IMG/VR virus record: IMGVR_UViG_3300020172_006270
Span: 159,269 to 223,268 of that record
DNA: 64,000 bases
Direction: 5' to 3' (one strand)
Shown here: positions 27,509-50,575 of the stretch, one piece after another
Layout: the number at the start of each line of letters is the position of its first letter
Numbering within the stretch: the stretch's first letter is position 1
Translations under genes and position numbers: made by a program
Notes under the pieces: model-generated
Seen by the model: the letters and a program-made list of their open reading frames with translations, nothing else
Database searches by the model: none
What the model was told of the DNA's origin: nothing

Positions 27509-28405
27509 TTATTGAGCTTGTTTCAAACCCGACAGGATCAACAGTTGATCCACGTCATTGTTTGTGGGTGCAGCGTATTCCGAAATCACTACACCATCAT
27601 CGGATGTCTTACCTCTCCCCGTTACATTCGTTGCATTCGTTGTTCTTTCTTTCTGCTCGTTGACAACCTCGGTCTTCTTCACAGACTTGATGGCCTTACG
27701 GCTCTCTGTGATAAGTTCCTGAGACTGACGCACGGCTTCGTTCAACTTGGTGTTTTCTGTGGAGAGACGGATGTTGCGTGCTTCCATAATGCGAAGCTGG
27801 CCCTTCATCTCTTCTACACTCTTGTTGACTTCTTCCAGCTTGCTGGAAGAAACTGATGCGAAATCATCGTCCGACAAGTAGTTGCTGGTCAGATCAATGA
27901 TCTTGTCCAGAGTAACCTTGTGTTCGGCCATACGAGGATCGTTTAATACGTCCCGCTTGGCTTGTTCATAGATTTCCTGGCCCTTGAATTGCAAGAACTG
28001 GTCAACCTTATCGACAATGTATTCCTTCATCTCAGCCAGTTTCTTGTCGTACTCTTCGTACATCTCGACTTCTAGCTGCTGATTCTTGTCTCGCTCGCCC
28101 TTGAGCATCTGGTATGCTTCTTCATACCCTTCCTCAAGTGCTGCCTTGTACTCTTCACCCTGAAGCTCAAGACGGTTACGAAGATCGCCAATAATAGCGT
28201 ATGCTTCTTCGTAGCCTTTCTCTGCTGTCTTTTCAGCGTTCGCCAACTCGCTAGTAAGCTCGGCGTAGGCTTCTTCAAGTTTCTGATTGTACTCAGTTTC
28301 GAGATTTACCTTAGCCTGCTCTAGCATGTCCTTGACGGCGGCTGCGACTTCGTTAATCTCAGATTCAGGTAGGAGCTTCTTCAGTGCTTCTGTAATCTTA
28401 TCCAT
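27509..28405 (-). CDS. Prohead scaffold/core protein, gp22-like
   Basis: Acidic coiled coil between protease and MCP. Confidence 0.75.
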   Translation of the reverse strand: MDKITEALKKLLPESEINEVAAAVKDMLEQAKVNLETEYNQKLEEAYAELTSELANAEKTAEKGYEEAYAIIGDLRNRLELQGEEYKAALEEGYEEAYQMLKGERDKNQQLEVEMYEEYDKKLAEMKEYIVDKVDQFLQFKGQEIYEQAKRDVLNDPRMAEHKVTLDKIIDLTSNYLSDDDFASVSSSKLEEVNKSVEEMKGQLRIMEARNIRLSTENTKLNEAVRQSQELITESRKAIKSVKKTEVVNEQKERTTNATNVTGRGKTSDDGVVISEYAAPTNNDVDQLLILSGLKQAQ

Positions 28406-29088
28406 TAGCCTAACCTCGCTTTGATATTGCTAGTTTGTTGTTCAATGATCCCGCCCAAGCAAGCAATAAGTGCTTCTTTATTTACATTATGTATGCGGCT
28501 ACATTCATTTTTCGCCACATTTTTGTGAATTTCAGAACTTGGTGCTGGTGTGTAACTTTCTTTCTTGCCAACGACCTTCTCCTGAAAGGCGTTGTAGGTG
28601 CTAGGATCAGCAACAGCATCGAAAGTAATTAGCTTGTAGCTTTCGCCAATAACTAAAATTCCATTCTCATCACTGCGACCGTTGCCAACGCCTCGGCTGC
28701 TGATTCCAACTCTCACCCCGTCAGACAAAAGACTTCGTAGTATTCTGCCGTGCGGTGTATTAAGAATCTCTCCTTCACCCATGAGGTTGTTTCCCTCCCA
28801 CCACAATTTAGTGATGACGTGAGAACATTTCTCAAAGTGAATGATCGAATCTGTAGGGTGATCTAACTCTCCCACCAGCCCACGGGCTTCTACGATGGGA
28901 ATCAATTTCTTGACGTTCTCATCGAGAACACCATAGGGGTAAATTCTTTTGTTTTTGTTAACTGCCTCGGCCTCTTGGAACTTGCCCTTGAACTTAGTCA
29001 GCCCCTTATCGGTAGCTGACTCGTTCAAATTCAAGACAAACCCGCCATTGTCACAGCAGTCAACGAATAGACTTAATCTTTCATCCAT
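28405..29088 (-). CDS. gp21: Prohead protease, T4 gp21-like
   Basis: NKNKRIYP, GELDHP, SHVI, TPHG, GISSRGVG, FDAVADPS. Confidence 0.95.
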   Translation of the reverse strand: MDERLSLFVDCCDNGGFVLNLNESATDKGLTKFKGKFQEAEAVNKNKRIYPYGVLDENVKKLIPIVEARGLVGELDHPTDSIIHFEKCSHVITKLWWEGNNLMGEGEILNTPHGRILRSLLSDGVRVGISSRGVGNGRSDENGILVIGESYKLITFDAVADPSTYNAFQEKVVGKKESYTPAPSSEIHKNVAKNECSRIHNVNKEALIACLGGIIEQQTSNIKARLG

Positions 29089-29111: not shown

Positions 29112-31016
29112 TTAGACCTTGGTTTCGCCTTTATCGACAACTAGGTTGTCGGACTTCATCTTGTACTTGCTCTTGTCCCAAGGGGAGTCAGGCACATACG
29201 GGTTCTTCAAGTTCGGCCATGTATCGCCAGACTGCCAACGGCTCCAATCGCTTTCGCCGTCATCAACTGCCGACTTCTCTTTCATCTTGTAGTCACCGAA
29301 AGGCTTCGGTACATATGGGTTCTTCATGTCCGGCCAAGTGTCTGCACCGCCAATGTTGCTCCATGAACGATTTCGCATTTCATCTGCTAGTCCGTTCTTG
29401 TAGCTCTTGCCGTCAGATACCGGAGCTTCGTCGCCCCAATCGCCGGTGTACTTGGATGGAACTGCATCATGCTGTTTAGCGTTCCAAGACATTTTTGGGT
29501 GATCGCCATTAACAGTGTGGTGTACATCACTGTTTGAAACGTCCCATGTGCTTTCAGCACCGGAAACATTCGCCTCAACTAGATCGTGCAGGTAATTGGC
29601 AATAGCCTCTGCAAGATTCAGGTCAACTTGAACTTCACGGTTCAGAACAGCAGCACATTCCTGCATGTAGTTCTCAACTTCAGCCTTGGTTGCTTCGTCG
29701 CCAGTTTCAGCAGCAACACGGTGGACTTCGTGGAGAGCCTTGAACAAGTCAGCAAACACTCGCAGATCAGCCGAGTCAGACTCGTCTAGCTGGGTGTAGA
29801 ACTTGTCAGCAACAGTCTTGAATTCCTTGTAGGAATCTTCACAAGTCTTGCATTCAGCGGTCAGGTCAGCAGTGCTACCGGCCAGGGAGCCGATCTTACG
29901 AACTCGATCTGTGAAGGCGTTGTGAGCAGTACGGAGAATTGCTTCTGCCATGAAAGAACACATATTGTCGTCATAATTGGTGACATTAGCTGTCTCCAAT
30001 GCTGTCGAAATCTGCTCTGCCAATTCACCTTCGGTGATGTACAGAACGTCCGGCCAACGGCTGACAATAGCTTCTAGGGTTTCTTCGAGTGAAGAATTGT
30101 CCGAAATATTGTTGTATCGCTTCAGATCGGTCATCGCCTTGATGAAAGTCTGGTCTTCTGAGAGCTTCTTGACGTTTCCACGGAGAACCTTGATCTCATG
30201 ATCCATAGTCTTCCAGTTGAAGGTCAAAATCTTGCCCTCGTTACGCTTCTGGATTGTTGGCATAGCCACACCAGTTACGTTGCCTCTGTCGTCTGTCTGA
30301 ATCATGGATTCGGACATTACAGGGCCAAATTCTTTGTAGTCCAAATAGCTCATGACGTTCTCGCACATCATCGACCATTCCTTAATGGTGGTCGGCTTGA
30401 CTTTACGAGCGTATGTACGCCAACGTGGGTTGGAAGAACCACCTAACTGCTTAGAAGCAGATGATCGCTTGCGACCGAGTTGTTCTTTCTGGCTCTTGGA
30501 TACACGGGAGAGGGTTTTGTTGCGTGAACGAGTACGCTTGGCGACCAAAGAACGGCTCTGCTTCTTGCCCCGCAGCGGAGAGTTGCTGCCAGTAGGCTTG
30601 GAAACAGTGACCTTAAATGCTTCGCTGACGAGCAATTCACGTCGAACGAACGGCATAGAAAGATAAGCCTCAAACTGCTGGCTTGCCTTAGCGTCGTTGC
30701 TCTCAAGTAGTGAATCTACCATATTGACTAGGATTTGGCGGGCGTTTTTCTTCTCGCTTTCCTCTTCAATAACCAATTGTTCAAGGTTCTCAAGAACCAA
30801 CTGGTCCTTGTCTAACTTGTAGCTGGCGTGTACGAAACTTCCGTCCGGTGCTTGGTATGTGACATCGGATTCCCCGAAGGTGAATAACTTTAAGTCATCT
30901 ACACCCAAGGTTTTTGCCAGCACTTCTTCTGCCCCGATTAACTCTTCCTGGGCGTTTGTAAGTGATGCTTCTTCGATTTTCTTAAACGCATCGAAGCTGA
31001 TTAGTTTTCTTTTCAT
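29112..31016 (-). CDS. Large head-core/assembly-like protein (start revised to 31016)
   Basis: First gene of head operon, SD GGGAG; MKRKLISFDAFKKIEE; basic central segment; C-terminal tandem repeat. Confidence 0.7.
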   Translation of the reverse strand: MKRKLISFDAFKKIEEASLTNAQEELIGAEEVLAKTLGVDDLKLFTFGESDVTYQAPDGSFVHASYKLDKDQLVLENLEQLVIEEESEKKNARQILVNMVDSLLESNDAKASQQFEAYLSMPFVRRELLVSEAFKVTVSKPTGSNSPLRGKKQSRSLVAKRTRSRNKTLSRVSKSQKEQLGRKRSSASKQLGGSSNPRWRTYARKVKPTTIKEWSMMCENVMSYLDYKEFGPVMSESMIQTDDRGNVTGVAMPTIQKRNEGKILTFNWKTMDHEIKVLRGNVKKLSEDQTFIKAMTDLKRYNNISDNSSLEETLEAIVSRWPDVLYITEGELAEQISTALETANVTNYDDNMCSFMAEAILRTAHNAFTDRVRKIGSLAGSTADLTAECKTCEDSYKEFKTVADKFYTQLDESDSADLRVFADLFKALHEVHRVAAETGDEATKAEVENYMQECAAVLNREVQVDLNLAEAIANYLHDLVEANVSGAESTWDVSNSDVHHTVNGDHPKMSWNAKQHDAVPSKYTGDWGDEAPVSDGKSYKNGLADEMRNRSWSNIGGADTWPDMKNPYVPKPFGDYKMKEKSAVDDGESDWSRWQSGDTWPNLKNPYVPDSPWDKSKYKMKSDNLVVDKGETKV

Positions 31017-31185
31017 AATCAATTGACTCCCTGTGCTGTTGTTGGATTCCTCATGCGCAACTGCTTCACTGCTGCTTGTGATGAGGGTATGTATTAACTC
31101 TATCTCAAATTTTACACCGTAATTCGTAAAATCCCTCACCGCCTAGTACATAGGTATGCAGAGAACATCAAAAACGGGATTCAAA

Positions 31186-32587: not shown

Positions 32588-32835
32588 CGCTTGGCGTACC
32601 AAAATTGATGAGCTTTCTTGAGGATGTCCTCGGAAAGCTCAAAGCCGCACATATCGCCAACAACTGAATCCACGCCGCATAGCGGACAGATCACAGTTTT
32701 GTCATTGTCGGTATAGTCTTTAATTTCCGTCACGTTGAAAATCTTCAAACAGTGAAAACAACCGGCGTTAGTGGATTGCTCCACTAACTGCCGGTTTTTC
32801 ATTGCTAACGTGGGGAATTGTGTGATTCCTGTCAT
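32584..32835 (-). CDS. Small Zn-ribbon protein
   Basis: GCFHCLKIF...TVICPLCGVDSV. Confidence 0.8.
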   Translation of the reverse strand: MTGITQFPTLAMKNRQLVEQSTNAGCFHCLKIFNVTEIKDYTDNDKTVICPLCGVDSVVGDMCGFELSEDILKKAHQFWYAKR

Positions 32836-35378
32836 TAACCCTCGTCGCCTACGCTATAGTCGATGTCTTCTCGGTCCTGCTCGGCTTCGTAGTCTTGAAT
32901 CTCAAGATCATACTTCTTGATGTCCTCTCCATCTGGCTCTGGAATATTCGCACCTTCAGGTGCCTTCGAGCCTGGATCAGCATCGGGCGTTTCATCTGCC
33001 CCAGAAGCCGTCGCCGTTGGTGGAGGAGGAGCGCCTGCCCCACCGCCTGCTGCCGCCATTGGATCACCGCCTGCCATCGGATCAGGCGACATGCCCGGTC
33101 CACCCGGTTCGGTTCCAAGTTCTCCCTGACCACCGCCTGCATCAGCCCCAGGAATGCCCACGCCCAATAGCTGTGGATTTTGTGCCAATACTTGCAGTTT
33201 GAGGTCTTCCAGCTTTTGCAACTTCAGACGTGCCAACATTTCGTCAGCTTCGTCTTCAGAAAACTTCAATATCTTTGTGACAATATCATAGTCAGCCATA
33301 AGCTGACCACTCTTTAACGTGCCAGCATTAGTATAGCGGGCCGTAACCACTTCCGCACGGGACAGTTCCCGCCAATCCGAAGGAGCCGTCATCTTGATCT
33401 TCAAGTCTTGATAGCTTTCTTCAGGATACCCTCTTAAATGCAAGTGGTGTTCTGCCATTTCCAGGATTCCATCCTCGAAGTGACTTTGCAGCCGCTCAAT
33501 CATGCGAGCGAATTTAACGTCTTGAGCAGACAAAGTAATTCTTGTCGCTCCTGGGTCTTCATTATTGAAATAGTTCTTCGGGAAATTCAAGCTGGTCAAC
33601 AACTTGTTTCTGAAGTAAACGGCGTCATCAATTTCACCCAGGTTTTCTGCACCCGGCAAAGTATCAATACGAGTGTTGCTATTTGGTCGAATTGGTAGCC
33701 AATAGTCCTCGTCCTGAGCAGGTGGTTGCCAGCGTTCTTCTACAGAATTCGCCCCAGGTGTTCCACGACCACTTGTAACCTTACGCTTGCGGAATTGATC
33801 CTTTAGTCGATCAATAAATGCTTCAGCCTTGAATGGAGGAAGCTGTCCAACGTCAATATAGAATACACGACGTTCTGGCGCACGGGTGAGTCGATAGACC
33901 ACCATTGCGTCTTCCATCAATCTCAAGCTGTGTGCCGGTCCACGGGCCGGTTCGATCAAGCTCTGGCCATACGGATAGAATGTCTTGCGATCATCGCCGA
34001 TTCGGAAGTGAACGATCTGACTCGGAGCGAACCGAATGGCTGTCGTCTGATTCAATTCCATTTCATTCTGGCCGGTGACTGGTCCCCGCACGATGGCCTG
34101 ATAATCGGGGCCTTCTTTACTTTGTTGGTACTCGATCATCTTGCCCTTCACCGTCTCAATGCGATACATCGTTTCGGGAGGCAATGGCATAGCCCGATAA
34201 ATGCCCTCTTTGGGATTGTCCGGGTTGATTACCATTTCAACGAACCAGTCTCCAGCAATGCACAGGTTCTTAAACCATGTCCAACCCTGTCGGTTCATAT
34301 TGAGCATCTTGCGATGCAACAACAGGAATTCTACTTCTTCACGGATTTCATCGTTGGCCGTAAGCACCTTGAAGATATTGCCATCTTCATCTTTTTGACA
34401 ATTGTGCAGGATCACAGAATCCGTGGCGAAGCATTTGTGTCCTTCAACTGAGATGTCGTAAACATCTTGCTCTGGTCCTTCCTCAACGCCTATGACTCTA
34501 CGGCGATCTTCATGCTTGTACAGAGTTCTAATCTCTGCTGGCGTGAAACCTTCTTTCTTGACCCAGCCATCTATTGATGACCAATCAAAATCCAGTTTTT
34601 TGGCAATTTGACGGGTGGTTAGTCCACCACCAATCATGCGAATCACCCTATTCACTTTTTCATATGCAGGGTTGCTTTTGCCAGTTTTCCAGTCGTCAAC
34701 AAATTGACGTTCGCTGATCCAGCCCTTCGTGAAGGTGAATAGGCGAGGAAATTGTTTATGTTTGAGTTCAGATGCCGCTGACAACCGATAGAATGGCATC
34801 AATTCGTCACCGAACCGAAGTTCTCCAGTTTCTACCCATGTTCCATCTTTCTTCAGAACACGATGATCTGAAGTAGCGGTGAACTTTGTCCCATTGTCCA
34901 TGACAATAGTTGTAGTTTTAGCTCGTTTGACGAGTCGTGGGGCGAAAGCCCAACCCAGGTTGTAGTCTTTTTTCTGGGCGTCATAACAGTAAACCAAAAA
35001 TCGTTCTTCGGCTCTCTTCTCTGCTAACTCTTTTATGGTAGTGAACCCGAACGGCGTAGCGATCTTAGTGTCACCGGCAACGCAGGCTTCGTCAGCAAAG
35101 ACCGTCATTGCCATTTCGATTTCCGGGACATTACGCAGACGCTCATACTCTTTATACCGCATGGAGCGGTTGGATAGAGTCGTCGTGTCGATCATGTCGT
35201 TGGTTTGACGGTAGCTTGTTTGGCCACCCGGTCCACCACCGCTTTGAAAATCCGTCCCTAGAGCTTCTGGTTGCGCAATACCAGCAGTCCCGAAGTTCTT
35301 AGGGTCTTTACGAGCCGACAGAGGGTCTTTCTCTGTGGCGTATGCGAACAATTTGAAAAAGTCTGACCAAAGTGGCAT
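32835..35378 (-). CDS. gp20: Portal protein, T4 gp20-like, intein-containing
   Basis: LRLMEDAMVVYRLTRAPERRVFYIDVG, EDYWLP, IDTLPG, LGEIDD. Confidence 0.95.
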   Translation of the reverse strand: MPLWSDFFKLFAYATEKDPLSARKDPKNFGTAGIAQPEALGTDFQSGGGPGGQTSYRQTNDMIDTTTLSNRSMRYKEYERLRNVPEIEMAMTVFADEACVAGDTKIATPFGFTTIKELAEKRAEERFLVYCYDAQKKDYNLGWAFAPRLVKRAKTTTIVMDNGTKFTATSDHRVLKKDGTWVETGELRFGDELMPFYRLSAASELKHKQFPRLFTFTKGWISERQFVDDWKTGKSNPAYEKVNRVIRMIGGGLTTRQIAKKLDFDWSSIDGWVKKEGFTPAEIRTLYKHEDRRRVIGVEEGPEQDVYDISVEGHKCFATDSVILHNCQKDEDGNIFKVLTANDEIREEVEFLLLHRKMLNMNRQGWTWFKNLCIAGDWFVEMVINPDNPKEGIYRAMPLPPETMYRIETVKGKMIEYQQSKEGPDYQAIVRGPVTGQNEMELNQTTAIRFAPSQIVHFRIGDDRKTFYPYGQSLIEPARGPAHSLRLMEDAMVVYRLTRAPERRVFYIDVGQLPPFKAEAFIDRLKDQFRKRKVTSGRGTPGANSVEERWQPPAQDEDYWLPIRPNSNTRIDTLPGAENLGEIDDAVYFRNKLLTSLNFPKNYFNNEDPGATRITLSAQDVKFARMIERLQSHFEDGILEMAEHHLHLRGYPEESYQDLKIKMTAPSDWRELSRAEVVTARYTNAGTLKSGQLMADYDIVTKILKFSEDEADEMLARLKLQKLEDLKLQVLAQNPQLLGVGIPGADAGGGQGELGTEPGGPGMSPDPMAGGDPMAAAGGGAGAPPPPTATASGADETPDADPGSKAPEGANIPEPDGEDIKKYDLEIQDYEAEQDREDIDYSVGDEG
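34401..35084 (-). mobile_element. Intein (228 aa) in portal protein
   Basis: Block A CVAGDTKI, block B ATSDHRVL, block F VYDISVEGHKCF, block G ILHN followed by Cys+1. Confidence 0.92.
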
Positions 35379-35465: not shown

Positions 35466-36077
35466 ATGAAGAAAATACTTTTCGTTTGCAGCCATCTACA
35501 TTCGGGTTCTTCTGCGTTATGTGACGCATTAAATCACCATCCTCGGATTCAGGGTTACAACTTAGCGGCTCGCAGTCCGTATGTTGGACCACCGAATCTA
35601 TTGACACTCACAGAGCAGCATCATAAGTTAGATAATCGGTCGGCAATTTACATGGATGAATTGCTTCATAATCATCACCTTTCAACGAAGGCAGCTTATA
35701 AAGAGTGTAAGTTCATCTATGTTGTGAGAGAACCTGCTGCTGTTTTGAATTTATTGATCGGTAATGAAAAAATGAAACCGTCCTTCGCCGTTAGGTATTA
35801 CACCTATCGACTCAGACGGTTGTGCGAGATGGCCAAGCGAACGCCTGGGGCTGTATTGTTGACTTGGGACGATTTAGTGGAGAATCGAGGAATTCCGCTG
35901 ATTGAAGATTACTTGAATCTCCGTCAGCCTATTTCCTACGACCCTACATCTTTGGCTCCCTTCAAAAGAACTTATTCTACCGATCTTGTCGGCTTGCAGT
36001 TACGCTCGAAAGTGGAAGATACCTACCAACGATACCTGTATTACCTGAAAAATCAAAATCTTCATTATTGGTCTTAA
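35466..36077 (+). CDS. Sulfotransferase-like P-loop protein
   Basis: HSGSSALCDALNHHP, FIYVVREP, LLTWDDL. Confidence 0.6.
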   Translation: MKKILFVCSHLHSGSSALCDALNHHPRIQGYNLAARSPYVGPPNLLTLTEQHHKLDNRSAIYMDELLHNHHLSTKAAYKECKFIYVVREPAAVLNLLIGNEKMKPSFAVRYYTYRLRRLCEMAKRTPGAVLLTWDDLVENRGIPLIEDYLNLRQPISYDPTSLAPFKRTYSTDLVGLQLRSKVEDTYQRYLYYLKNQNLHYWS

Positions 36078-37044
36078 TTGGCAATACTGGAGCTTCCTTG
36101 ATAAACCACAATACACCAGTCCAAGTTCGAGAGTATTCGCTCACGATTTCCTCTCGTGTAGGGTTTCTTTGGTGTGTTCCAAATTCCATAACAACTGCAA
36201 ATGCACCATTGCGATAATACCAGTCTACTTCGCTGCCATGAATGGGTCGGCCATACATATTGCAGGCACGATCCATTCTGTAGTCACACATCTTTCCCAT
36301 TTGTCCAACGATACGCTGGTAGTCAGCCTCGTTAGGACATTTTTGATTCGTGTCTCCGAACGGAGTTAAAAAGATGCGACCGAAAGTGTGTCCTGAAATG
36401 ACAGCGTTGGGTTTAATCTTTAAGAAGAAATCCTGTAGAGCTTGAATGCTAGGCGTCGATTTGTAAGTGGGACGGGACGGACCAGGGAAGTCACGATTAG
36501 GGTCAACTCCATCAACGTGGCGGCTGTGTGGATAACTGTCAGGAGAAACAACTGGAATGATGTAAATGTCTCTGGACTCAATCAAATCGGTAATTTCTTT
36601 GTTCTTCCCATAGCCAGCCAGGAGATTACCTGCGTAAGCCATGACGCAACCTGTGGACCAAGGTTCATTTCCGTGAATACAACCAGTGATAAGAACTCGT
36701 GGGCGATCTTTTACTTCAATTTTGTTGCATATTCTGATGTAACAAATATCAACGCCTCTTTTTGTTTTGCCATAGAATCCAACATCTGTTAGATCAGGCG
36801 CTTCTTCTTGCCATTTTTGAACTTGGTTTATAACTTCTGAATAGCTTAAATGCGGCGGTACTTGAACAGTAATGTTCGGCAAGCGTGGAGTTTTGGGTGG
36901 CTCAGGAATAACTTCAACAGGCGGTTGAACCTGAGTGATTGGTTGTGTCTGCAATTCACGATTATTGCGTGTTTTGACGTTGAATGCGACAAATAGGGCT
37001 AATGTGAGAACTCCTACGGCCCAACCTAAATTGAATCCTTTCAT
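35977..37044 (-). CDS. Membrane-anchored M14 zinc carboxypeptidase
   Basis: IHGNE, PVVSPD, DPNRDFP, ISGHTF, MEFG; N-terminal TM. Confidence 0.88.
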   Translation of the reverse strand: MKGFNLGWAVGVLTLALFVAFNVKTRNNRELQTQPITQVQPPVEVIPEPPKTPRLPNITVQVPPHLSYSEVINQVQKWQEEAPDLTDVGFYGKTKRGVDICYIRICNKIEVKDRPRVLITGCIHGNEPWSTGCVMAYAGNLLAGYGKNKEITDLIESRDIYIIPVVSPDSYPHSRHVDGVDPNRDFPGPSRPTYKSTPSIQALQDFFLKIKPNAVISGHTFGRIFLTPFGDTNQKCPNEADYQRIVGQMGKMCDYRMDRACNMYGRPIHGSEVDWYYRNGAFAVVMEFGTHQRNPTREEIVSEYSRTWTGVLWFIKEAPVLPIKTNNEDFDFSGNTGIVGRYLPLSSVTASRQDR

Positions 37045-37389: not shown

Positions 37390-38118
37390 TTACTTACTTG
37401 GTTGGAGTATGTAATCTTTTGGATAGACCCCTTGTGGGCCATTTCTATCTACAATTGGAATCTCCGGTACTATTGGTCGGTATTTTTGTGGCACAATGTC
37501 GTTGTCGGCATACACCACACAAATCCACCCATCCCAACGACGGTTAAATTCTTCCATAGTCCAAGTGCGAATCTTGAGCGAACTATCGCTGTTGTTGATG
37601 TACTTGACTATTCCCTTTTGTTCGTCGTAATGCACCAAGGTCATTGCGTGACCTGGGACTGCGAACAAACAACCACGTCTTTCTTGGACAACTGACTTGA
37701 TGATTAAACTACGATCAGACCTACTTGTTGTCTGTTCGTATCTCACCCGTAGTTGTTTTAGTTTAGTGGCGGCACTGCTTGGACTAGCATAGCTTTTGCA
37801 ATCTGCTAAGTCAGTCATGTTGATTAGTTTTGGTTCTTCAGCGTATCGTCCGCAAGTTTCAAGCGAACACCATACACACTGAATTCCCGTCTTGTTGAAG
37901 ACACGATCCTTCATTGGGATCGGCACCATTACATCGGTGAGGTCTTCGTCCGCTTCTCCTTCATACTCAGCTACAGGATTCTGTACTGGAATGCCAGGAT
38001 TTGGATTTGGATATTGATGATTGGTAGTTTGTCCACGCAAAGTGTGTTTTGGAAGCGTGATTGCAACGCTGCTCAAAGCCACAACTGCGCAGGCTAAAAC
38101 CGCAAGCAACTTCTTCAT
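37390..38118 (-). CDS. Secreted papain-fold (C39-like) cysteine peptidase
   Basis: Signal peptide; QCVWCS, GHAMTLV, YINNS; SD AGGAGG. Confidence 0.65.
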   Translation of the reverse strand: MKKLLAVLACAVVALSSVAITLPKHTLRGQTTNHQYPNPNPGIPVQNPVAEYEGEADEDLTDVMVPIPMKDRVFNKTGIQCVWCSLETCGRYAEEPKLINMTDLADCKSYASPSSAATKLKQLRVRYEQTTSRSDRSLIIKSVVQERRGCLFAVPGHAMTLVHYDEQKGIVKYINNSDSSLKIRTWTMEEFNRRWDGWICVVYADNDIVPQKYRPIVPEIPIVDRNGPQGVYPKDYILQPSK

Positions 38119-38776: not shown

Positions 38777-39136
38777 TTACTCGTCATCGTCGTCATCATC
38801 GTCATCGTCGAAGTCATCATCATCGTCGTCATCGTCGTCGTCCCAATCGTCATCGTCGTAGTCGTCGTCTTCATCATCGTCGTCATCGAGATCATCCTCG
38901 TCGTCGTCATCTTCATCTTCATCCCAATCGTCATCGAGGTCGTCATCGTCCTCGTCGTCATCGAGATCGTCATCGTCTAAATCATCATCGTCGTCGTCCT
39001 CGTCGTCGTCATCGTCGTCTTCGAGGTCGTCATCTTCCCAATCTTCGTCATCATCGAGGTCGTCCTGGGCAAAGACAATACGATCCTCTTCAATATCGAA
39101 ATCGAGTTCACAATCGCTATAGTACAGGCCGCTCAT
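38777..39136 (-). CDS. Poly-aspartate acidic protein (119 aa; start revised to 39136)
   Basis: SD AAGGAG; about 95 C-terminal residues are D/E with sparse L/W/Y/F. Confidence 0.8.
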   Translation of the reverse strand: MSGLYYSDCELDFDIEEDRIVFAQDDLDDDEDWEDDDLEDDDDDDEDDDDDDLDDDDLDDDEDDDDLDDDWDEDEDDDDEDDLDDDDDEDDDYDDDDWDDDDDDDDDDFDDDDDDDDDE

Positions 39137-39188
39137 GGGTATTCTCCTTTTTTGATGGTGACGGCAATACATATCATAGGAGGAGCCT

Positions 39189-39620
39189 ATGAAAAAACTA
39201 CTGCTTTTTGCGTCTTTATGTTTACCAATTTTTGCAGGTTGCACCGCAGCCCCATTGCTTATCAGCCCAATTGTGACGGGTGTAATCATGTGGAAAGACG
39301 GTGAAGCTCACAAATATTATAACGAGGAAGCCCATACTCTGTATCGGGCTACGAAAACATCTTTGAAAGAATTGGATCATCCAATTATCAAAGAGGAACC
39401 CTACAGGGACGGCGGCTACTATATCGTTGCTGGTGAAGGTGATAAATTCAAGATCACCATCCGACAAGTAAAGCCGCACATCACTGAGGTCAAAATTCGC
39501 ATAAACTTCATGGGCGACAAGCCTTATGCGGAGTTGGTGTATCGCCAAATTGACTCAAACACCAACACCATCGACTTTGATGACCAAGGTAAACCAACAA
39601 AACGTAAACAAAGACGGTAA
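39189..39620 (+). CDS. Lipoprotein, DUF3568-like
   Basis: Lipobox FAGC; TEVKIRI..GD; SD AGGAGG. Confidence 0.7.
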   Translation: MKKLLLFASLCLPIFAGCTAAPLLISPIVTGVIMWKDGEAHKYYNEEAHTLYRATKTSLKELDHPIIKEEPYRDGGYYIVAGEGDKFKITIRQVKPHITEVKIRINFMGDKPYAELVYRQIDSNTNTIDFDDQGKPTKRKQRR

Positions 39621-39636: not shown

Positions 39637-41373
39637 TTAGCAGACTTTTCTTGACGCACTGCTGCCATATTTATACGTTGTTCTTCCTCCGGCCCTGACA
39701 GTGGTATAACAGCCAACTTTCGGGGCCGGAGTCGTTGGTACAGGGTCACAATCGCATGATCTAGGCTTGCAATTGGCATTGTGGCAGGCAACACAGCCGG
39801 AATTATTGGCTGGCTTCCACGGTTTGCCATATTCTGGGGCATTCGGATCACAATAGTTGGGCTTACCACAGGTGCAAACAATTTGCTTACGCATGAGCTT
39901 GCCATGACGGTTCTCGAACAGAGCGGAATCATGTTCGCCGACCAAGCCGCCATCATTCAATATACGCAGGCAGTTATATGCTGCGTCCAGAATTTCTCCC
40001 TCATGGGATTCCGATACGCCCACCAATTTATCATTGTCGAAATAATATGCCGTTTGATCTGGCACGGTAATTTCCAAGTCGAACAATGGATTCGCATCCA
40101 AAGCCGTCACTGGTCCGAGTTTATCTGACAACTTCATTGTCTTGGTCGTAAGCGTGCGGACAATTTTCATGTCGCCATACGTTTGAACTTCGTGCGGCTT
40201 TTTGATGTCTTTCAAAACGGACTCGACATCGGCATCTTCCAGCATCATTACACGTTGACGTAATATTCCTCTCTGAGAAAATACCTCACGCATAATAGTT
40301 TGATATTTCCCGCCCTCGGCGTGGTCAATTGCCAACATCTGTTGTGCAATGGCGTCGAACAAGCGAACCGTAGTCGGTGCCTGCACAACAGCCTTCAGCA
40401 AATAATTTGCAACAATGTCTCTGGACAATTTCATTCCATCACGAAGAACGTGGCCCTGGTTAATGTGAGCTACGCCAATTCGCACAACGATTTCCCAGAA
40501 GGCTCCAGTGAACACACGGCTAAAGCTGTGCGATTCGCCTAACAGTTGATCGTCTCGACCTTCGCTTGGCAATTTTTCTGGTTCTGTGTAGTTGAATACC
40601 TGGGTCATATCTCGCAAGCAATTTGGCAACTCGCCATTTTTGCCTTCTGTCAGGTGGTGCAATCCCGTTCCCATCTCTGCCGCAAGACGAGTTATGATAT
40701 TTGACTTCATTAAGTCGCCATTGGTTTCAATGATGGCGTGGTCAATTAACTGATCGTACTGTAAAGAAATCAACGCAGCCGTCATGTCGCCGAAGGCTTC
40801 ATGGAAAGCCCAAACCTCGGCAGCTTGAGTGTCCCACCAATCTGGTCGCAGGATGTCTAGGAACGCATGACCGAACTCATGAACAACGACCGGGCGTGCG
40901 TCACAAGCAAAGATGTTTTTGTTTATCTTTGGATCGCCAAAAAAGAAGAATCGTAGTGATCCACGATCATAATAAGCGTTAAGGTCTTTTCCAGCACGAG
41001 GCATCAGGATCAACGATTGTACCGCTGCCCAATTTCTGATTTGCTTTGGAGATTTGCTTGCCATATACACGAGAGCATCGTGTACCATAATCTTTAACGC
41101 CAGAGCTTGCTGCTGAAGACTTCCCAACGGATAGCCGCCACCCATTTCACCAATGGATCGCATGGCCAACATTGTGTCTGCTGGCTCCAGCACATTGACG
41201 ATCATGTTTGGGTAGGTTGGATCACTCAGGTAAACTTTAGTATTCGGGTCTGTTGGACGAGCCACTGGCACAGGACGTGGTTTTCTGTTGACAATAATTG
41301 CCTGAGCCGTCACTTCGTCTGATGTTTTTCCTAGACTTTTGATCCAGTTGATTATTCCTTTAAGCATCTTCAT
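39637..41373 (-). CDS. Gluzincin metalloprotease (M4/M36-like) with Cys-rich tail
   Basis: NAYY, VVHEFGH, AFHEAFGD, ESHSFS. Confidence 0.82.
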   Translation of the reverse strand: MKMLKGIINWIKSLGKTSDEVTAQAIIVNRKPRPVPVARPTDPNTKVYLSDPTYPNMIVNVLEPADTMLAMRSIGEMGGGYPLGSLQQQALALKIMVHDALVYMASKSPKQIRNWAAVQSLILMPRAGKDLNAYYDRGSLRFFFFGDPKINKNIFACDARPVVVHEFGHAFLDILRPDWWDTQAAEVWAFHEAFGDMTAALISLQYDQLIDHAIIETNGDLMKSNIITRLAAEMGTGLHHLTEGKNGELPNCLRDMTQVFNYTEPEKLPSEGRDDQLLGESHSFSRVFTGAFWEIVVRIGVAHINQGHVLRDGMKLSRDIVANYLLKAVVQAPTTVRLFDAIAQQMLAIDHAEGGKYQTIMREVFSQRGILRQRVMMLEDADVESVLKDIKKPHEVQTYGDMKIVRTLTTKTMKLSDKLGPVTALDANPLFDLEITVPDQTAYYFDNDKLVGVSESHEGEILDAAYNCLRILNDGGLVGEHDSALFENRHGKLMRKQIVCTCGKPNYCDPNAPEYGKPWKPANNSGCVACHNANCKPRSCDCDPVPTTPAPKVGCYTTVRAGGRTTYKYGSSASRKVC

Positions 41374-41421: not shown

Positions 41422-41940
41422 ATGAGCAGAGAACAACAGATAAAAGAAGCCCGAACCATAGAAGCCATGAAAAAAGGTTACATGGGGTTAGAAGGCAAAT
41501 TTTGCAGCATTACCAAGTACATCGGCCAGCCGATATTCCATCAAGGAAGTCGTGTGTTTGAGCAGACATTTCTTGATGATCCTTATGAAATTCCTGAAGC
41601 TGACGATATTCCCATGATGGAAGAAGACCAAAATTCCTACGAAGTTGGTCAACAGTTTGATGGGTTGACTCGTGGAATGAATCTGACCATTTCAGTCGCT
41701 TATCATTTGCGTGAGATCACTTGCCGGTATGAAGGAAGAATTGTTTATAAGGAAATTGCTGGAGAACTCGAAGGGTATGCGCCTGAACCCGCCTGGGAAG
41801 ATAAAATAGAGATATTGGCTGCACTCGCCAGGAAGCTCGAACGGCAGGATCGACCAATTGAACGTCGTAAGCTAATCGAGTCAAATCAAAAGAAAAGAAC
41901 CGAAATACTTGAATACTTGAAGTTAAAATGGGGACTCTGA
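41422..41940 (+). CDS. Hypothetical protein
   Basis: TATATA box and SD GGAGG. Confidence 0.75.
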   Translation: MSREQQIKEARTIEAMKKGYMGLEGKFCSITKYIGQPIFHQGSRVFEQTFLDDPYEIPEADDIPMMEEDQNSYEVGQQFDGLTRGMNLTISVAYHLREITCRYEGRIVYKEIAGELEGYAPEPAWEDKIEILAALARKLERQDRPIERRKLIESNQKKRTEILEYLKLKWGL

Positions 41941-45215: not shown

Positions 45216-45647
45216 TTAGAGTCCACGCACGATTTGTTTGAAATGATCCAAGTCTTCACGGCTGGCTTGCACCTGTCCTTCGAGGAAGATTTCAAGCCAT
45301 GTTCCATCAACGCCGCCCAAGTCGTCGGCGTCTTTCATCCGTTGCACATAGTTATTGACGACTTCTTCTTCCATTGCAACAGCATATTCCATGATGTCTT
45401 TAGGGTCGGTGTATTTTCCGAAATCATTTGACTCAAAAGTGGCAACGCCACCCAAACCAATGATAACGTCTGAAAACTGCGACACATGCAGCATTTCTGA
45501 AGCTGCCTCTTTGAGAAACAACTCCTTGTATTCAGCACAATGCAGGCCAGTCACAGCGCTCGCATGATACAAGTAAAAACGTAAATGCTTCCATTCATTT
45601 TTGAGGTCGTCATTCAACATCTGAATCATCTTGTCTTTGTTCATCAT
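45216..45647 (-). CDS. Ferritin-like / bacterioferritin-family protein
   Basis: LNDDLKNE...Y, EMLH, LGG, EEEVVNNY, EDLDH. Confidence 0.85.
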   Translation of the reverse strand: MMNKDKMIQMLNDDLKNEWKHLRFYLYHASAVTGLHCAEYKELFLKEAASEMLHVSQFSDVIIGLGGVATFESNDFGKYTDPKDIMEYAVAMEEEVVNNYVQRMKDADDLGGVDGTWLEIFLEGQVQASREDLDHFKQIVRGL

Positions 45648-46775
45648 TTAATCCTTGTGAAAATGTACATCTTTGTGTCCGTGATCGTGCGTGTATTCCA
45701 TCTCCCGGAATCCACCATAATTGAACGATGGCTTGGTATCTGAATTGACGACTTTCCACGTCAATTCAAATCCATACTTTGCTACCTTCTCAATGCCAGA
45801 GAAATTGATTTTATCTGCTGTATCTCTCGGCGTGTGATAATTGTCGTGCATTCCAGTGTGCAAGAACGCAATTGGAACCTTCTTATTGTAGAAGCAAGCG
45901 TGATCGCTGCCACCACTGCTACGGCCTGTAATGCTCTTAGCAAATGAGTATTTTCCACTCAATTCCCCAATGATGCTCGACACGTCAGGAGAGCTTTCCC
46001 CTTCGTTGAAGGCAACGGCAGTGCGAGCTTTGCCCAAATATCCAACCATATCCATATTGAGCATGAATATATGCTTGCGAATATTGGGGTCGCCTTTCGG
46101 GAAAATAGGGTTGTCGCAATAATATCGTGACCCAATTAACCCCATTTCCTCGGCACTAAAAGACATAAAGACCACGGTTCTTTTGTTCTGACCACGCAGA
46201 GACGCAAAGGTTTTGGCTATTTGAAGCAAAGCCACCGTCCCTGAAGCGTTATCGTCAGCCCCAGGGTGAATTTTCCCGCCACCCGACCGGCTCATGGCTG
46301 GTCCCCAGCCAATGTGGTCCATGTGTGCGCCAACAACTACGATCTCATCTTTTAATTCGGTGCCTTCAATCCAGGCAATGATATTCTGCGTGAAATCATC
46401 ACCAGTTTCATTGTTCGGCCCAGGATTCATTCTTTTGATATTGAACTTTTGATATGCCGTATCGAGGCCGAAACTTTCATATATCTTTTTCAGATAATCG
46501 GCAGCGACAACATTTCCTTTTTTGCCCGACATTCGACCTTCAAGCTCGGCAGAACACAAATATTCTAAATGTTTTTGCAATTCGCTTTCAGATATATCTG
46601 CGATGGCTTCATCATAAGTCTTTTTGCGTGGCGGGTCCACGTCAGGTGGCGGCAAAGGCTCGACCGGAGGAACGAATTCTTCTTGAACAATGGGCGGCGG
46701 GACATCACGTTTGCTGATATACACAGCAAGCAAAATGATTCCCAGCGACAGTACAACGAGAGGGAGCTTACGCAT
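45648..46775 (-). CDS. Membrane-anchored M28 peptidase (start revised to 46775)
   Basis: GAHMDH, GADDNASG, AEEMGLIGS, NMDM, SDH, YHTPRD. Confidence 0.92.
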   Translation of the reverse strand: MRKLPLVVLSLGIILLAVYISKRDVPPPIVQEEFVPPVEPLPPPDVDPPRKKTYDEAIADISESELQKHLEYLCSAELEGRMSGKKGNVVAADYLKKIYESFGLDTAYQKFNIKRMNPGPNNETGDDFTQNIIAWIEGTELKDEIVVVGAHMDHIGWGPAMSRSGGGKIHPGADDNASGTVALLQIAKTFASLRGQNKRTVVFMSFSAEEMGLIGSRYYCDNPIFPKGDPNIRKHIFMLNMDMVGYLGKARTAVAFNEGESSPDVSSIIGELSGKYSFAKSITGRSSGGSDHACFYNKKVPIAFLHTGMHDNYHTPRDTADKINFSGIEKVAKYGFELTWKVVNSDTKPSFNYGGFREMEYTHDHGHKDVHFHKD

Positions 46776-46869
46776 GGCAAACCCTGTTTTATTAGTGTGT
46801 TGGCTATATATTCTGTCCAAACAACCTACAAGGAAGCGAGGACTCCAACTTAATTAGAAAAGGAATATA

Positions 46870-48741
46870 ATGGATCAAGCCGTATTTTTCAAGAGCAAAC
46901 GTGACTCTGTTTGGCGGGGCAAACACAAAACCCTGGAAGAATTCTATAAGAGTGGTGGGAAGATACTTAAACGAGGGGAGGGCAAAAAGAGTCGTCTCCA
47001 ATATGATCCCGACTATTACACTCTCGACAAGTATGAACTTGAAATTGATCCCGATGAGCCGCTGGAAAACTTCGATACTTACGATTCGGCCCGTCGTCAA
47101 AAAGAGATCATCAAGTGCTGCAACAGCTTCGCTTATTTCTGCCACAAATATGTGAAGATTCTTCACCCGATGGATGGTTTGATTCCTTTCGTATTATACA
47201 ACTATCAGCGAAAGGTTATCCAAGAATACGAAAACCACCGATTTAACATCATCAGTAAGTTTCGTCAAGGGGGACTGACGACAGTAACTTTGCTGTGGGG
47301 CATGTGGCGCTGCATGTTCCAACTCGACCAACAGATCATGATCTTGGGTCGAACTGACCGTGACGCCACAGATATTGGCATGATGGTGGATCGTTCCATT
47401 GAGAACTTCCCAGATTGGTTGAAGCCAATAAAAGATGGTAAGTGGAATGACCACATGAAGATGTTCACGGACACCGGGTCGGCCTTAAAATTTCACTCTC
47501 CTGAAGCTGCTCGTGGTAAGTCCGTTACATTCTTGATTGTGGACGAAGCTGCGTTCATTGATGACATGGACAAGCACTGGAAAGCTATGTGGCCTATCCT
47601 TTCGACGGGTGGTGGTTGCACCCTTGTATCCACGGTTAATGGTCTGGGCAACTGGTATGAACAAACCTACCACGAAGCACAAGAAAAGCAAAACCGATTC
47701 AATATCATCGACTTGGATTATTGGGAACATCCCGACTACAACGACGATGAATGGGTTAAAGAACAAAAGGCACAACTCGGCGAGAAAGGCTTCTTGCAGG
47801 AAGTGTTGCGTGAGTTCCTTGGCTCCGGTGACACTTACTTCTCTGCTAAGGTCATCACACAACTCACAGAGCAAACCAGAAACAATTACCCTAGCCGCAA
47901 GTTATTCCCGAAATGGGTCAACAAGGCAGGCCGTATTGCTGTGTTGGAAAGTGAAGACCACAACAAGGGTGCTATGTGGGTCTGGAAAGAACCAATTGAT
48001 GGCCATGAATATATCATTGGCGCTGACGCCTCTGAAGGCCAAGGCAACAATAACGACAATTGCTGTTTTCAGGTAATTGATACAGCAACTTTGGAACAAG
48101 TGGCCGAGTTTTACTCCAATATCATTGTGCCTCACGAATTCGCTCAGGTGCTTAATGAAGTGGGCATTTATTACAACAATGCTCTGATTGTTGTCGAAAA
48201 CATGGGTCCAGGCGGGGCTGTTCTAAGCAACCTGCAATTCACCTTGTTTTACGAGAACCTTTATTACGAAAGCCTTAAATCGGCCAACGTAAAACCGGGC
48301 ATCAAAATTGGTCAAGTAAACCGATCTCTATATTTGGAATCTCTCCAAAATCGGCTATTGAACCAAACTGTGCGTATTAACAGTATGCGATTTGTTATGG
48401 AACTTCAGACTTTTGAGTACAACCCTGTCACTCGCAAGGCTGAAGCCCAAAAAGGCAAGCACGACGACGCTATTATGTCTATGTGTATGGCCCTTTATGT
48501 TCGTGATTCCATGTTGCGAGACATACCTATGGGGGCAGAGATTCCGAAAGAAGTAACGGCCACGCTAAAAGCTCAGGTATATGAAGAAATCAAACGTGAA
48601 TTGATGGAAGGAAGACCAGAAGATTTCCTTATGGATGATGAAATAGACCTTTTAGCGCCCGACAAAGATACTGTCATGCCCGGTGTTATTTTCAACATTG
48701 AGCGTCGGAACGATAGACTGCTTAAAGAATTTGGGTGGTAA
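46870..48741 (+). CDS. gp17: Terminase large subunit, T4 gp17-like
   Basis: LYNYQ, KFRQGGLTT, IVDEAAF, VSTVNG, GADASEG, VENMGPG, HDDAIM. Confidence 0.95.
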   Translation: MDQAVFFKSKRDSVWRGKHKTLEEFYKSGGKILKRGEGKKSRLQYDPDYYTLDKYELEIDPDEPLENFDTYDSARRQKEIIKCCNSFAYFCHKYVKILHPMDGLIPFVLYNYQRKVIQEYENHRFNIISKFRQGGLTTVTLLWGMWRCMFQLDQQIMILGRTDRDATDIGMMVDRSIENFPDWLKPIKDGKWNDHMKMFTDTGSALKFHSPEAARGKSVTFLIVDEAAFIDDMDKHWKAMWPILSTGGGCTLVSTVNGLGNWYEQTYHEAQEKQNRFNIIDLDYWEHPDYNDDEWVKEQKAQLGEKGFLQEVLREFLGSGDTYFSAKVITQLTEQTRNNYPSRKLFPKWVNKAGRIAVLESEDHNKGAMWVWKEPIDGHEYIIGADASEGQGNNNDNCCFQVIDTATLEQVAEFYSNIIVPHEFAQVLNEVGIYYNNALIVVENMGPGGAVLSNLQFTLFYENLYYESLKSANVKPGIKIGQVNRSLYLESLQNRLLNQTVRINSMRFVMELQTFEYNPVTRKAEAQKGKHDDAIMSMCMALYVRDSMLRDIPMGAEIPKEVTATLKAQVYEEIKRELMEGRPEDFLMDDEIDLLAPDKDTVMPGVIFNIERRNDRLLKEFGW

Positions 48742-49708: not shown

Positions 49709-50043
49709 AAACAAACACAAACGAGACAAAAGCGGCTTTGCAGAAAGCATTAGCGCAAGTACCGCAAGACCATGCTTTGTCAGAAGTACGTTATCACATA
49801 CGGGCCGCTCTAGGAAAGCTGGAGACTGTTGAGAAGAAACGGGATCGTCGTGAGGTTAACTCGGAACGTCGTGAATTGGCACGGGGCCAAGGCAATGCGT
49901 ATTCGTATGATCCATTCCGGGCAATTCAGGCTATTGACGAAGAAATCGCCAAAGAAAAAGCCAAGATTGAAAATATTCAACGCCGCCGTACACAAGATGA
50001 CGAGAAAGATGACGGCGATGAGCTTCAAACAGTTCTTGGTTAA
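49705..50043 (+). CDS. Small coiled-coil protein
   Basis: Overlaps upstream stop by 4 nt; charged helical composition. Confidence 0.7.
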   Translation: MKTNTNETKAALQKALAQVPQDHALSEVRYHIRAALGKLETVEKKRDRREVNSERRELARGQGNAYSYDPFRAIQAIDEEIAKEKAKIENIQRRRTQDDEKDDGDELQTVLG

Positions 50044-50575
50044 TGAAGGACGTAGAAACAAATACGACTACTCTTCATTATTGGTCGAACCGCCAGAAGA
50101 AATTGCAGACAATGTAATTTCTTGGGGGTGGGATCATGTACCTAATGAATCCGTGTTTCTTGATCCTAAAGACCCCAGCTTTGGTCGAGAAGATGACCCT
50201 CACATTACTTTAATCTATGGCATTCACACAGACATCTTAAAAGAAGTGTCTGATCTGTTTGTTGACGAGAAAGAGTTTGAGTGTAAGTTGGGCAAGATTG
50301 ATATGTTTACGAAAAGCGATAAATTCGATGTGCTAATCGTAAGCGTGGAATGCGAAGAGTTACACAGGCTAAATCGTAAGATGCGAAGAAATTTAGAAGC
50401 CACTGAAAGCTATCCTGTTTATGTGCCTCACGTTACAATTTGCTACCTGAAAAAAGGTCAAGGCAAACAATACATTGGCAATGACGTTTTTGTAGATGAA
50501 AAGTTTACGATCAACAAGATTTTCTTTTCTTCAAAGACTGGCGAAAAAACTCCAATAAAGTTAGGTGCAAAATGA
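50018..50575 (+). CDS. 2H phosphoesterase, Acb1/T4 gp57B-like (start revised to 50018)
   Basis: Two HxT motifs PHITLIYG and YVPHVTICY; MSFKQFLVNE. Confidence 0.8.
   Translation: MSFKQFLVNEGRRNKYDYSSLLVEPPEEIADNVISWGWDHVPNESVFLDPKDPSFGREDDPHITLIYGIHTDILKEVSDLFVDEKEFECKLGKIDMFTKSDKFDVLIVSVECEELHRLNRKMRRNLEATESYPVYVPHVTICYLKKGQGKQYIGNDVFVDEKFTINKIFFSSKTGEKTPIKLGAK

What the first reader, a model, noticed from the sequence alone, without database searches (positions are those of the whole stretch)
38777..39136. Near-pure poly-aspartate protein
After a 24-aa head, about 95 residues are D/E with only 11 spaced L/W/Y/F and no basic residue. Mixed GAT/GAC codons and a good SD argue for a real gene rather than slippage. 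Established: acidic phage proteins such as Ocr and Arn mimic DNA. Inference: a polyanion decoy for nucleic-acid-binding defences or nucleoid proteins, a chaperone for basic proteins, or a cation sink.
Basis: partly seen in the sequence, partly recalled or inferred. Interest (0 to 1): 0.6.

Follow-up and report, generated by a model that had tools for sequence, protein, structure and literature searches.

The report
Poly-aspartate partner of phage protease
A real, conserved gene of a group of very large freshwater phages encodes a floppy protein that is about three-quarters aspartate and nearly always sits just after a thermolysin-like protease gene; nothing like it has been described, and its job is still untested (my best guess is a disposable polyanion in head assembly).

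Summary
Window 38777-39136, minus strand, encodes 119 aa: a 24-aa head, then 95 residues made of 74 D, 10 E, 6 L, 3 W, 1 Y and 1 F. Net charge is about -90. Asp codons are mixed (GAC 42, GAT 36) and a GGAG Shine-Dalgarno lies 7 nt upstream.

The window is part of a T4-like huge phage; its closest deposited relative is a 595-kb uncultured phage. The gene is not a one-off. In 65 of 66 IMG/VR loci that carry the upstream 576-aa gene, one acid-rich open frame follows it on the same strand. That gives 53 unique proteins:
- 48-171 aa long
- pooled tails 84% D+E, 4% W, 0.6% K+R

The heads are not conserved. The upstream protein folds as a thermolysin/fungalysin-like zinc protease with an intact HExxH...E site. 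Two related huge phages without this protease have no poly-Asp tract.

The module (172-aa gene, protease, poly-Asp gene) always lies between the terminase and portal genes. My best reading is inferred, at about 0.3: an expendable disordered polyanion cleared by its own protease during head assembly, a functional analogue of T4 gp67. Rival readings are a protease regulator, an adaptor for basic proteins, or a DNA-mimic decoy. There are no expression data.

The parts
38777..39136 (-). Poly-aspartate protein CDS (119 aa, P0001): 24-aa head plus 95-aa D/E tail studded with L/W/Y/F
   Evidence: orthologues
39144..39147 (-). Shine-Dalgarno GGAG within an A-rich leader, 7 nt before the ATG; the same AAAGGAG leader is kept in the orthologues
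39637..41367 (-). 576-aa thermolysin/fungalysin-like zinc metalloprotease (TLP). It has HEFGH plus a downstream Glu, no signal peptide, no FTP/PepSY propeptide, and a Cys-rich C-terminal tail. An upstream TTG at 41436 is a less likely start
   Evidence: AF2 pLDDT 81.7; Foldseek hits to M36/M4 enzymes, E 1.7e-6 and weaker; invariant H163 E164 H167 E190 D194; no Pfam hit
41422..41940 (+). 172-aa protein transcribed divergently from the TLP. It is the third constant member of the module; fold unassigned
   Evidence: present in 69 of 69 TLP loci; AF2 pLDDT 83.6, no structural match
39189..39620 (+). DUF3568 lipoprotein gene on the opposite strand between the TLP and poly-Asp genes. It is an insert present in about half of the loci, not a core part
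   Evidence: Pfam PF12092; 32 of 69 loci; absent in LR756511.1
38137..38769 (-). 210-aa gene starting 7 nt after the poly-Asp stop. It is accessory (15 of 69 loci); function unknown

Best explanation
Shown:
- The gene encodes a conserved, extremely acidic protein that is predicted to be disordered.
- It is inherited as a unit with the thermolysin-like protease (TLP) gene just upstream and a divergent 172-aa gene.
- This unit sits inside the terminase-portal block of a clade of T4-like huge phages.

Inferred mechanism:
- The pair is a protease plus an expendable substrate, like the protease-scaffold gene pairs of phage head modules.
- The polyanion acts at or inside the assembling prohead as a DNA-like charge and space filler, a functional analogue of T4 gp67, the acid-tailed scaffold-core protein.
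- It must be cut into short acidic peptides by its own protease before or while the genome is packaged. A nearly pure Asp chain offers few, if any, sites of the kind the T4-type prohead protease cuts in T4 proteins.
- The spaced bulky residues (W, Y, L, F) may serve as cleavage or binding points. They may also be what allows a ribosome to translate such a D/E run at all.

My odds: real translated gene about 0.9; functional coupling to the TLP about 0.75; the specific head-assembly and clearance mechanism about 0.3.
For: Linkage to the TLP:
- A same-strand acid-rich frame follows the TLP in 65 of 66 loci with room downstream, at TLP identity 30-92%. None lies upstream or on the other strand.
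- There are 53 unique proteins.
- The pairing survives a rearrangement in LR756511.1 in which the lipoprotein, 210-aa, 242-aa and M14 genes are no longer found beside it.
- In that 595-kb genome the only (GAY)10-like tract is this gene. Two relatives without the TLP, of 484 and 385 kb, have none.
- One locus has the TLP without the poly-Asp gene (L051). The reverse was not seen in the few genomes checked, which fits a poly-Asp protein that depends on the protease.

The TLP looks active: intact zinc-site residues and a thermolysin/fungalysin fold.

Context: the module always lies near TerL and/or the portal. The window also holds a T4-type portal, S77 prohead protease and Gp23 capsid protein.

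Precedent: T4 gp67 is a 47-aa head plus a 33-aa acidic tail. It is a scaffold-core component that gp21 degrades to peptides (PMC9958956).

Composition is selected rather than mutational. W is 4.15% of tails although TGG is three changes away from GAY, while the one-step neighbours A, G, V and H are rare.
Against: - There are no expression, virion or prohead data; no RNA run holds the locus.
- W is not a classical thermolysin P1' residue, and thermolysin disfavours an acidic P1 (my own knowledge).
- A canonical S77 protease and a scaffold-like gene are already present.
- Relatives without the TLP build T4-like heads without any poly-Asp gene.
- No conserved head or targeting peptide exists.
- The neighbourhood is not purely structural: it holds exported peptidases, a lipoprotein, a ferritin and an Acb1-like gene.
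- The bulky residues have a rival explanation in ribosome stabilisation.
- There is no sequence similarity to gp67.
Confidence: 0.3

Rival explanations
1. Latency factor of the protease. The polyanion holds the propeptide-less, cytoplasmic TLP in check until it is needed. It could do this as a pseudo-substrate whose carboxylates reach the zinc, or by buffering Ca/Zn. This would resemble the inhibitor genes that follow some bacterial protease genes (staphostatins, AprI; my own knowledge).
For: The gene lies on the same strand directly downstream of the TLP in nearly all loci. The TLP has no signal peptide and no FTP/PepSY hit. It has an intact active site.
Against: Length and sequence drift freely (48-171 aa), which is unlike tight inhibitors. 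One TLP locus lacks the gene. The complex prediction gave no answer (not evidence either way).
Confidence: 0.2
2. Adaptor or bait. The polyanion binds basic nucleic-acid-binding proteins (nucleoid proteins, free ribosomal proteins, defence nucleases) and hands them to the TLP. Polyphosphate does this for Lon in E. coli (my own knowledge).
For: Extreme negative charge (median -75). Obligate pairing with a protease. Multivalent bulky residues could dock on the enzyme.
Against: No conserved basic partner gene lies nearby. There is no binding evidence. It is wholly inferential.
Confidence: 0.15
3. Free-standing DNA mimic or anti-defence decoy. It would act either in the cell or after being packaged and injected.
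For: It has polyanion character. An Acb1-like counter-defence gene lies about 10 kb away in the same block, so the region is not purely structural.
Against: It is predicted disordered, whereas known mimics are folded with a fixed charge geometry. There is no Pfam or PHROG match to Ocr, ArdA or Arn families. This reading does not explain the TLP linkage. The gene lies among late-type genes.
Confidence: 0.15
4. Mainly a cis-acting translational device. A D/E run destabilises ribosomes in a Mg-dependent way (as in MgtL) and so tunes the genes downstream; the product itself would be unimportant.
For: D/E runs cause intrinsic ribosome destabilisation (bioRxiv 10.1101/2021.02.02.429294). The 210-aa gene starts 7 nt after the stop in this window.
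Against: Tails of 28-138 codons are far longer than a sensor needs. The downstream genes differ between loci (TerL, 210-aa, 242-aa, others). Bulky residues that counteract destabilisation are selected, which points towards completing translation.
Confidence: 0.05
5. Artefact or non-coding repeat.
For: The tract is low-complexity and attracts unrelated reads.
Against: The tract is reproduced exactly by a second assembly. There are 53 unique orthologues from many samples. Variation is at third positions only, with a conserved start and Shine-Dalgarno.
Confidence: 0.02

Closest known systems
T4 gp67 (PIP), prohead scaffold-core protein
   Same: Small protein with a short non-acidic head and a long D/E tail. 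It is encoded in the head gene cluster of a T4-type phage and is destroyed by a phage protease (PMC9958956).
   Different: No sequence similarity. The gp67 tail is 33 aa of mixed E/D with K and S; here the tail is 95 aa of nearly pure D with W/L/Y/F. gp67 sits directly after the portal gene; this gene sits after a thermolysin-like protease 3.4 kb on the other side of the portal. gp67 is cut by the serine protease gp21.
Protease-scaffold gene pairs of tailed-phage head modules (T4 gp21-gp22, lambda C-Nu3; my own knowledge)
   Same: A protease gene is followed on the same strand by a fast-evolving, acidic gene of variable length whose product is expendable.
   Different: The protease here is a zinc metalloprotease of the thermolysin fold, not an S77/S78/S80-type prohead protease. 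A canonical S77-scaffold pair also exists in the window.
Phage DNA-mimic proteins (Ocr, ArdA, Arn)
   Same: Strongly acidic small phage proteins.
   Different: Those proteins are folded, with carboxylates arranged like DNA phosphates, and are usually early genes. This one is predicted disordered, matches none of their families and is tied to a protease.
Eukaryotic polyD/E disordered proteins (prothymosin-alpha, DAXX/ANP32-type acidic tracts, fish aspolin; my own knowledge)
   Same: Long D/E tracts that work through bulk charge while staying disordered.
   Different: Unrelated lineage and context. None is paired with a dedicated protease, and few approach 66% Asp.
Thermolysin (M4) and fungalysin (M36) peptidases, for the neighbouring gene
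   Same: Shared fold and the HExxH plus Glu zinc site.
   Different: 11-16% identity. No Pfam M4/M36 hit, no signal peptide or propeptide, and an extra alpha/beta domain and Cys-rich tail.

Membership tests
T4 gp67 / PIP | Detectable sequence similarity to gp67 | tested here: not met
   BLASTP of P0001 against P0002 gives no alignment at E <= 100
T4 gp67 / PIP | Gene lies directly downstream of the portal gene, ahead of the prohead protease | tested here: not met
   Portal is at 32835-35378(-). The ORFs between it and the S77 protease are an 83-aa Cys-rich ORF, two plus-strand ORFs of 305 and 143 aa, and a 675-aa ORF. The poly-Asp gene lies upstream of the portal
T4 gp67 / PIP | Short head plus acidic C-terminal tail | tested here: met
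T4 gp67 / PIP | Component of the prohead core, degraded during maturation | not testable with these tools
   Needs prohead proteomics of a cultured relative
DNA-mimic anti-restriction proteins (Ocr, ArdA, Arn) | Membership of the corresponding Pfam/PHROG families | tested here: not met
   No family at E <= 10 (Pfam), 0.01 (PHROGs) or 0.1 (NCBIfam)
DNA-mimic anti-restriction proteins (Ocr, ArdA, Arn) | Stable fold presenting carboxylates in DNA-like geometry | tested here: not met
   ESM Atlas model of this exact sequence has pLDDT 0.43 and pTM 0.08
DNA-mimic anti-restriction proteins (Ocr, ArdA, Arn) | Blocks restriction or other DNA-binding defences | not testable with these tools
   Needs plating and binding assays
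Thermolysin-like gluzincins (neighbouring gene) | HExxH plus a downstream Glu zinc ligand, conserved across the family | tested here: met
   Invariant H163, E164, H167, E190 and D194 in 44 sequences
Thermolysin-like gluzincins (neighbouring gene) | Thermolysin-type two-lobe fold | tested here: met
   Foldseek: 4k90_A at E 1.7e-6, TM by target 0.57; thermolysin, ProA, aureolysin and LasB at E 1e-5 to 1e-3
Thermolysin-like gluzincins (neighbouring gene) | Sequence membership of Pfam M4/M36, with an FTP/PepSY propeptide and a secretion signal | tested here: not met
   No Pfam hit at E <= 10 apart from a chance STI1 match; no PDB sequence hit
MgtL-type D/E leader peptides | Short leader ORF ahead of one fixed regulated gene | tested here: not met
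   The ORFs are 48-171 codons long, and the downstream gene differs among loci

The most novel reading that the evidence does not exclude
The 172-aa protein, the thermolysin-like protease and the poly-Asp protein form a previously unknown two- or three-component proteolytic system of huge phages. In it a protein-made polyanion, a genetically encoded stand-in for polyphosphate or DNA, works in one of two ways. It may capture basic nucleic-acid-binding proteins of the host for destruction. Or it may act as a sacrificial buffer whose consumption times the release of the protease late in infection.
Probability: 0.15. Interest if true: 0.85.

Novelty: new variant of a known kind. Interest (0 to 1): 0.62.

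Why it matters
Proteins that are two-thirds aspartate are very rare in microbes and viruses. Here there is a whole family of them: 53 unique proteins from IMG/VR contigs of many metagenome data sets, with a median net charge of about -75. The family is under clear compositional selection and is welded to a protease gene in a clade of phages whose longest contigs carrying the protease family reach about 460-600 kb.

If the protein is a head-assembly filler, it shows how giant T4-like capsids extend the gp67-type scaffold-core idea using a second protease of a different catalytic class. If it is a regulator or adaptor of the protease, it would be a new way for a virus to control or aim proteolysis with a disordered polyanion.

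It is also a natural test case for how ribosomes get through extreme D/E runs, because bulky residues, Trp above all, are selected at intervals with a median of 7 residues.

Tried and rejected
Searches for relatives of the poly-Asp protein itself:
- Megablast of the locus against deposited phages: no match.
- Pfam, PHROGs and NCBIfam: nothing.
- Word search with residues 1-40: 5 candidates, none significant.
- Back-translated pattern scan of IMG/VR: 593 pattern hits, none a relative by tblastn.
- tblastn against phages: nothing.
- ESM Atlas by features: only unnamed or unrelated acidic clusters.
- Relatives were found only through the neighbouring genes.

Binding and neighbour folds:
- Complex prediction of the TLP with the poly-Asp protein scored 0.00 and gave no answer, so it counts neither for nor against binding.
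- The 172-aa partner folded well but has no convincing match in PDB (Foldseek, VIA wide) or the Atlas.
- The 210-aa and 242-aa neighbours have no family, PDB sequence or Atlas lead.

Timing of expression:
- The T4 late-promoter octamer occurs once, at chance level.
- The sigma-70 and terminator scans are at background.
- A CTATATA-type motif is enriched upstream of genes but absent before this gene.
- The conserved TATGATATG element before the gene is unique in the genome.
- No RNA runs hold the locus.

Other checks:
- The inverted repeat at 39174-39192 does not fold better than shuffles (z -1.0).
- No TLP-poly-Asp fusion exists in 65 loci.
- No strongly basic partner gene lies nearby.
- Literature searches found no description of such a protein in phages.
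- Read laying was given 4201 letters.

Full report
**What is there**

The finding lies on the minus strand. An ATG at 39136 opens a 119-codon frame that ends with TAA at 38777. A GGAG within an A-rich leader lies 7 nt upstream.

After a 24-residue head, the remaining 95 residues are 74 Asp, 10 Glu, 6 Leu, 3 Trp, 1 Tyr and 1 Phe. The single basic residue of the protein (R19) is in the head. Net charge is about -90.

Asp codons are GAC 42 and GAT 36, close to the genome-wide ratio, and no codon is repeated more than three times in a row. Tandem Repeats Finder reports only a 65-66% period-3/6 pattern.

In the 223-kb record only one other ORF reaches 60% D+E in a 30-residue window, at 63% against 90% here. 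Logan's independent contigs of the probable source run reproduce the tract without a difference; they break only inside a 30-nt overlap.

**Where it is**

The window is the last 64 kb of a 223-kb IMG/VR record that CheckV rates 46% complete. It carries T4-type head genes:
- a portal with an intein (32835-35378)
- an S77 prohead protease (28405-29088)
- a Gp23-type capsid protein (26028-27464)
- a large terminase (46870-48741)

The closest deposited genome is LR756511.1, an uncultured phage of 595 kb, with 80% capsid-protein identity. Runs that hold parts of the locus are freshwater, lake and sediment metagenomes.

**It is a family, found through its neighbours**

Nothing is found with the protein itself. 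Loci fetched through the neighbouring 210-aa and 576-aa genes all carry a syntenic acid-rich ORF of 102-134 aa. LR756511.1 does too.

A profile of the 576-aa protein then recovered 69 IMG/VR loci at 30-92% identity:
- Of the 66 loci with sequence downstream, 65 have exactly one frame with at least 70% D+E over 40 residues.
- That frame is always on the same strand and downstream of the 576-aa gene.
- No such frame occurs upstream or on the other strand.

This gives 53 unique proteins of 48-171 aa. Pooled with the window's protein, the tails are D 65.7%, E 18.3%, W 4.15%, Y 2.5%, L 2.05%, N 2.0% and F 0.8%, with K+R 0.64%. Median net charge is -75.5, and bulky residues recur at a median spacing of 7.

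Trp needs three substitutions from an Asp codon, yet it is the third commonest residue. The one-step neighbours Ala, Gly, Val and His are rare. So composition is selected while position is not.

The heads fall into unrelated groups and can shrink to five residues. The tail is therefore the functional part.

**The partner**

The 576-aa protein has at least 621 metagenomic relatives, on contigs of up to 603 kb, all unnamed. With a 44-sequence alignment it folds at pLDDT 81.7. It matches fungalysins, thermolysin, ProA, aureolysin and LasB, with a best E of 1.7e-6.

H163, E164, H167, E190 and D194 are invariant, which is the gluzincin zinc site. It has no Pfam hit, no signal peptide and no FTP/PepSY propeptide.

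A 172-aa gene is transcribed divergently from it in 69 of 69 loci. The other neighbours come and go: lipoprotein 32 loci, 242-aa 33, 210-aa 15, M14 peptidase 14.

In LR756511.1 the block is rearranged and those accessory genes are not found next to it, but the order 172-aa gene, protease, poly-Asp gene is kept. In that 595-kb genome a (GAY)10 pattern with up to 3 mismatches hits only this gene. LR756508.1 (484 kb) and XacN1 (385 kb) lack the protease and have no hit.

One locus (L051) has the protease, without its Cys-rich tail, but no poly-Asp gene. There are no fusions; the gap between the two genes is 69-1913 nt.

**How it may work**

Shown: this is a conserved polyanion, predicted disordered, genetically coupled to a thermolysin-like protease. 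It is always near the terminase and/or portal genes.

Inferred: the arrangement copies the protease-scaffold logic of head modules, and T4 offers a direct functional precedent. gp67 has a 47-aa head and a 33-aa acidic tail. It sits in the scaffold core at about 340 copies and is degraded to peptides by gp21 (PMC9958956).

I therefore favour, at about 0.3, an expendable polyanionic filler of the prohead that its own protease clears.

The asymmetry fits this reading or a cofactor role: the protease occurs once without the poly-Asp gene, and the poly-Asp gene was not seen without the protease. It fits an indispensable inhibitor less well.

Points against the favoured reading:
- Trp is not a typical thermolysin P1' residue, and an acidic P1 is disfavoured (my own knowledge).
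- A canonical S77-scaffold pair is already present.
- Relatives without the protease need no such protein.
- The block also holds non-structural genes: a ferritin, M14 and M28 peptidases, and an Acb1-like phosphoesterase.

The bulky residues also have a different possible reason. D/E runs destabilise translating ribosomes, and this is countered by about 30 residues of preceding chain and by bulky residues (bioRxiv 10.1101/2021.02.02.429294). That could explain both the head and the Trp/Tyr/Leu/Phe studs without any binding role.

**Rivals and limits**

The remaining readings are a latency factor of the protease, an adaptor for basic proteins, a DNA-mimic decoy, or a cis-acting translational device. 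They are listed with odds in the Rival explanations section.

The complex prediction gave no answer. Promoter scans did not settle timing. No RNA data exist. No paper describing such a phage protein was found.

**Verdict**

The decoy interpretation is untested. The key new fact is the near-obligate pairing with a thermolysin-like protease in T4-like huge phages.

Noticed in passing
window 32835-35378 (-): The T4-type portal gene carries an intein (Intein_splicing domain at residues 113-326). The same portal-plus-intein arrangement is seen in related contigs.
   Followed up: partly
window 35977-37044 (-), 45648-46820 (-), 37390-38118 (-): A cluster of further peptidase-like genes lies between the terminase and the portal. 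It comprises an M14 carboxypeptidase with an N-terminal membrane anchor, an M28 aminopeptidase, and a 242-aa protein with a signal peptide and a Cys...His pattern that looks papain- or C39-like by eye. The last has no family hit.
   Followed up: partly
window 45216-45647 (-): A ferritin-like gene (PF00210, E 7.9e-15) lies next to the terminase and is conserved at this place in many related loci.
   Followed up: partly
window 49829-50575 (+): A 2H-phosphoesterase with a hit to the anti-CBASS Acb1 family (E 3.2e-8) lies about 1 kb after the terminase. It is a possible counter-defence gene inside the structural block.
   Followed up: no
G000:C1:145442-146449 (+), outside the window: A 335-aa ORF made of alternating Lys-rich and Asp/Glu-rich blocks (net charge -46). 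It is the second most acidic ORF of the record; function unknown.
   Followed up: no
G000:C1:75075-85385, outside the window: A cluster of 14 tRNA genes, only Leu, Phe, Ser and Tyr. There is no tRNA-Asp in the 223 kb held, despite the Asp demand of this gene.
   Followed up: no
window 46804, 51557, 37079 and other sites in G000: A CTATATA[AT]-type motif is 14-18 times enriched within 70 nt upstream of predicted genes, including the terminase. It is a candidate phage promoter element, and it is not present before the poly-Asp gene.
   Followed up: partly
window 39174-39192: An inverted repeat covers the lipoprotein gene's Shine-Dalgarno and start codon and is conserved in several related loci. 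Its folding energy is not better than shuffles (z -1.0).
   Followed up: yes
window 39637-39870 (-), C-terminal about 80 residues of the protease: A Cys-rich tail with nine invariant Cys, modelled at low confidence. It is missing in the more distant protease homologues and in L051.
   Followed up: partly
L051 4987-6177: This is the one related locus where the protease gene is followed by the lipoprotein and 210-aa-like genes but no acid-rich ORF.
   Followed up: partly
window 29112-31139 (-): A 675-aa ORF between the portal and the prohead protease has a strongly basic segment. It is a possible core protein, reminiscent of the basic tail of T4 gp68; no family hit.
   Followed up: no
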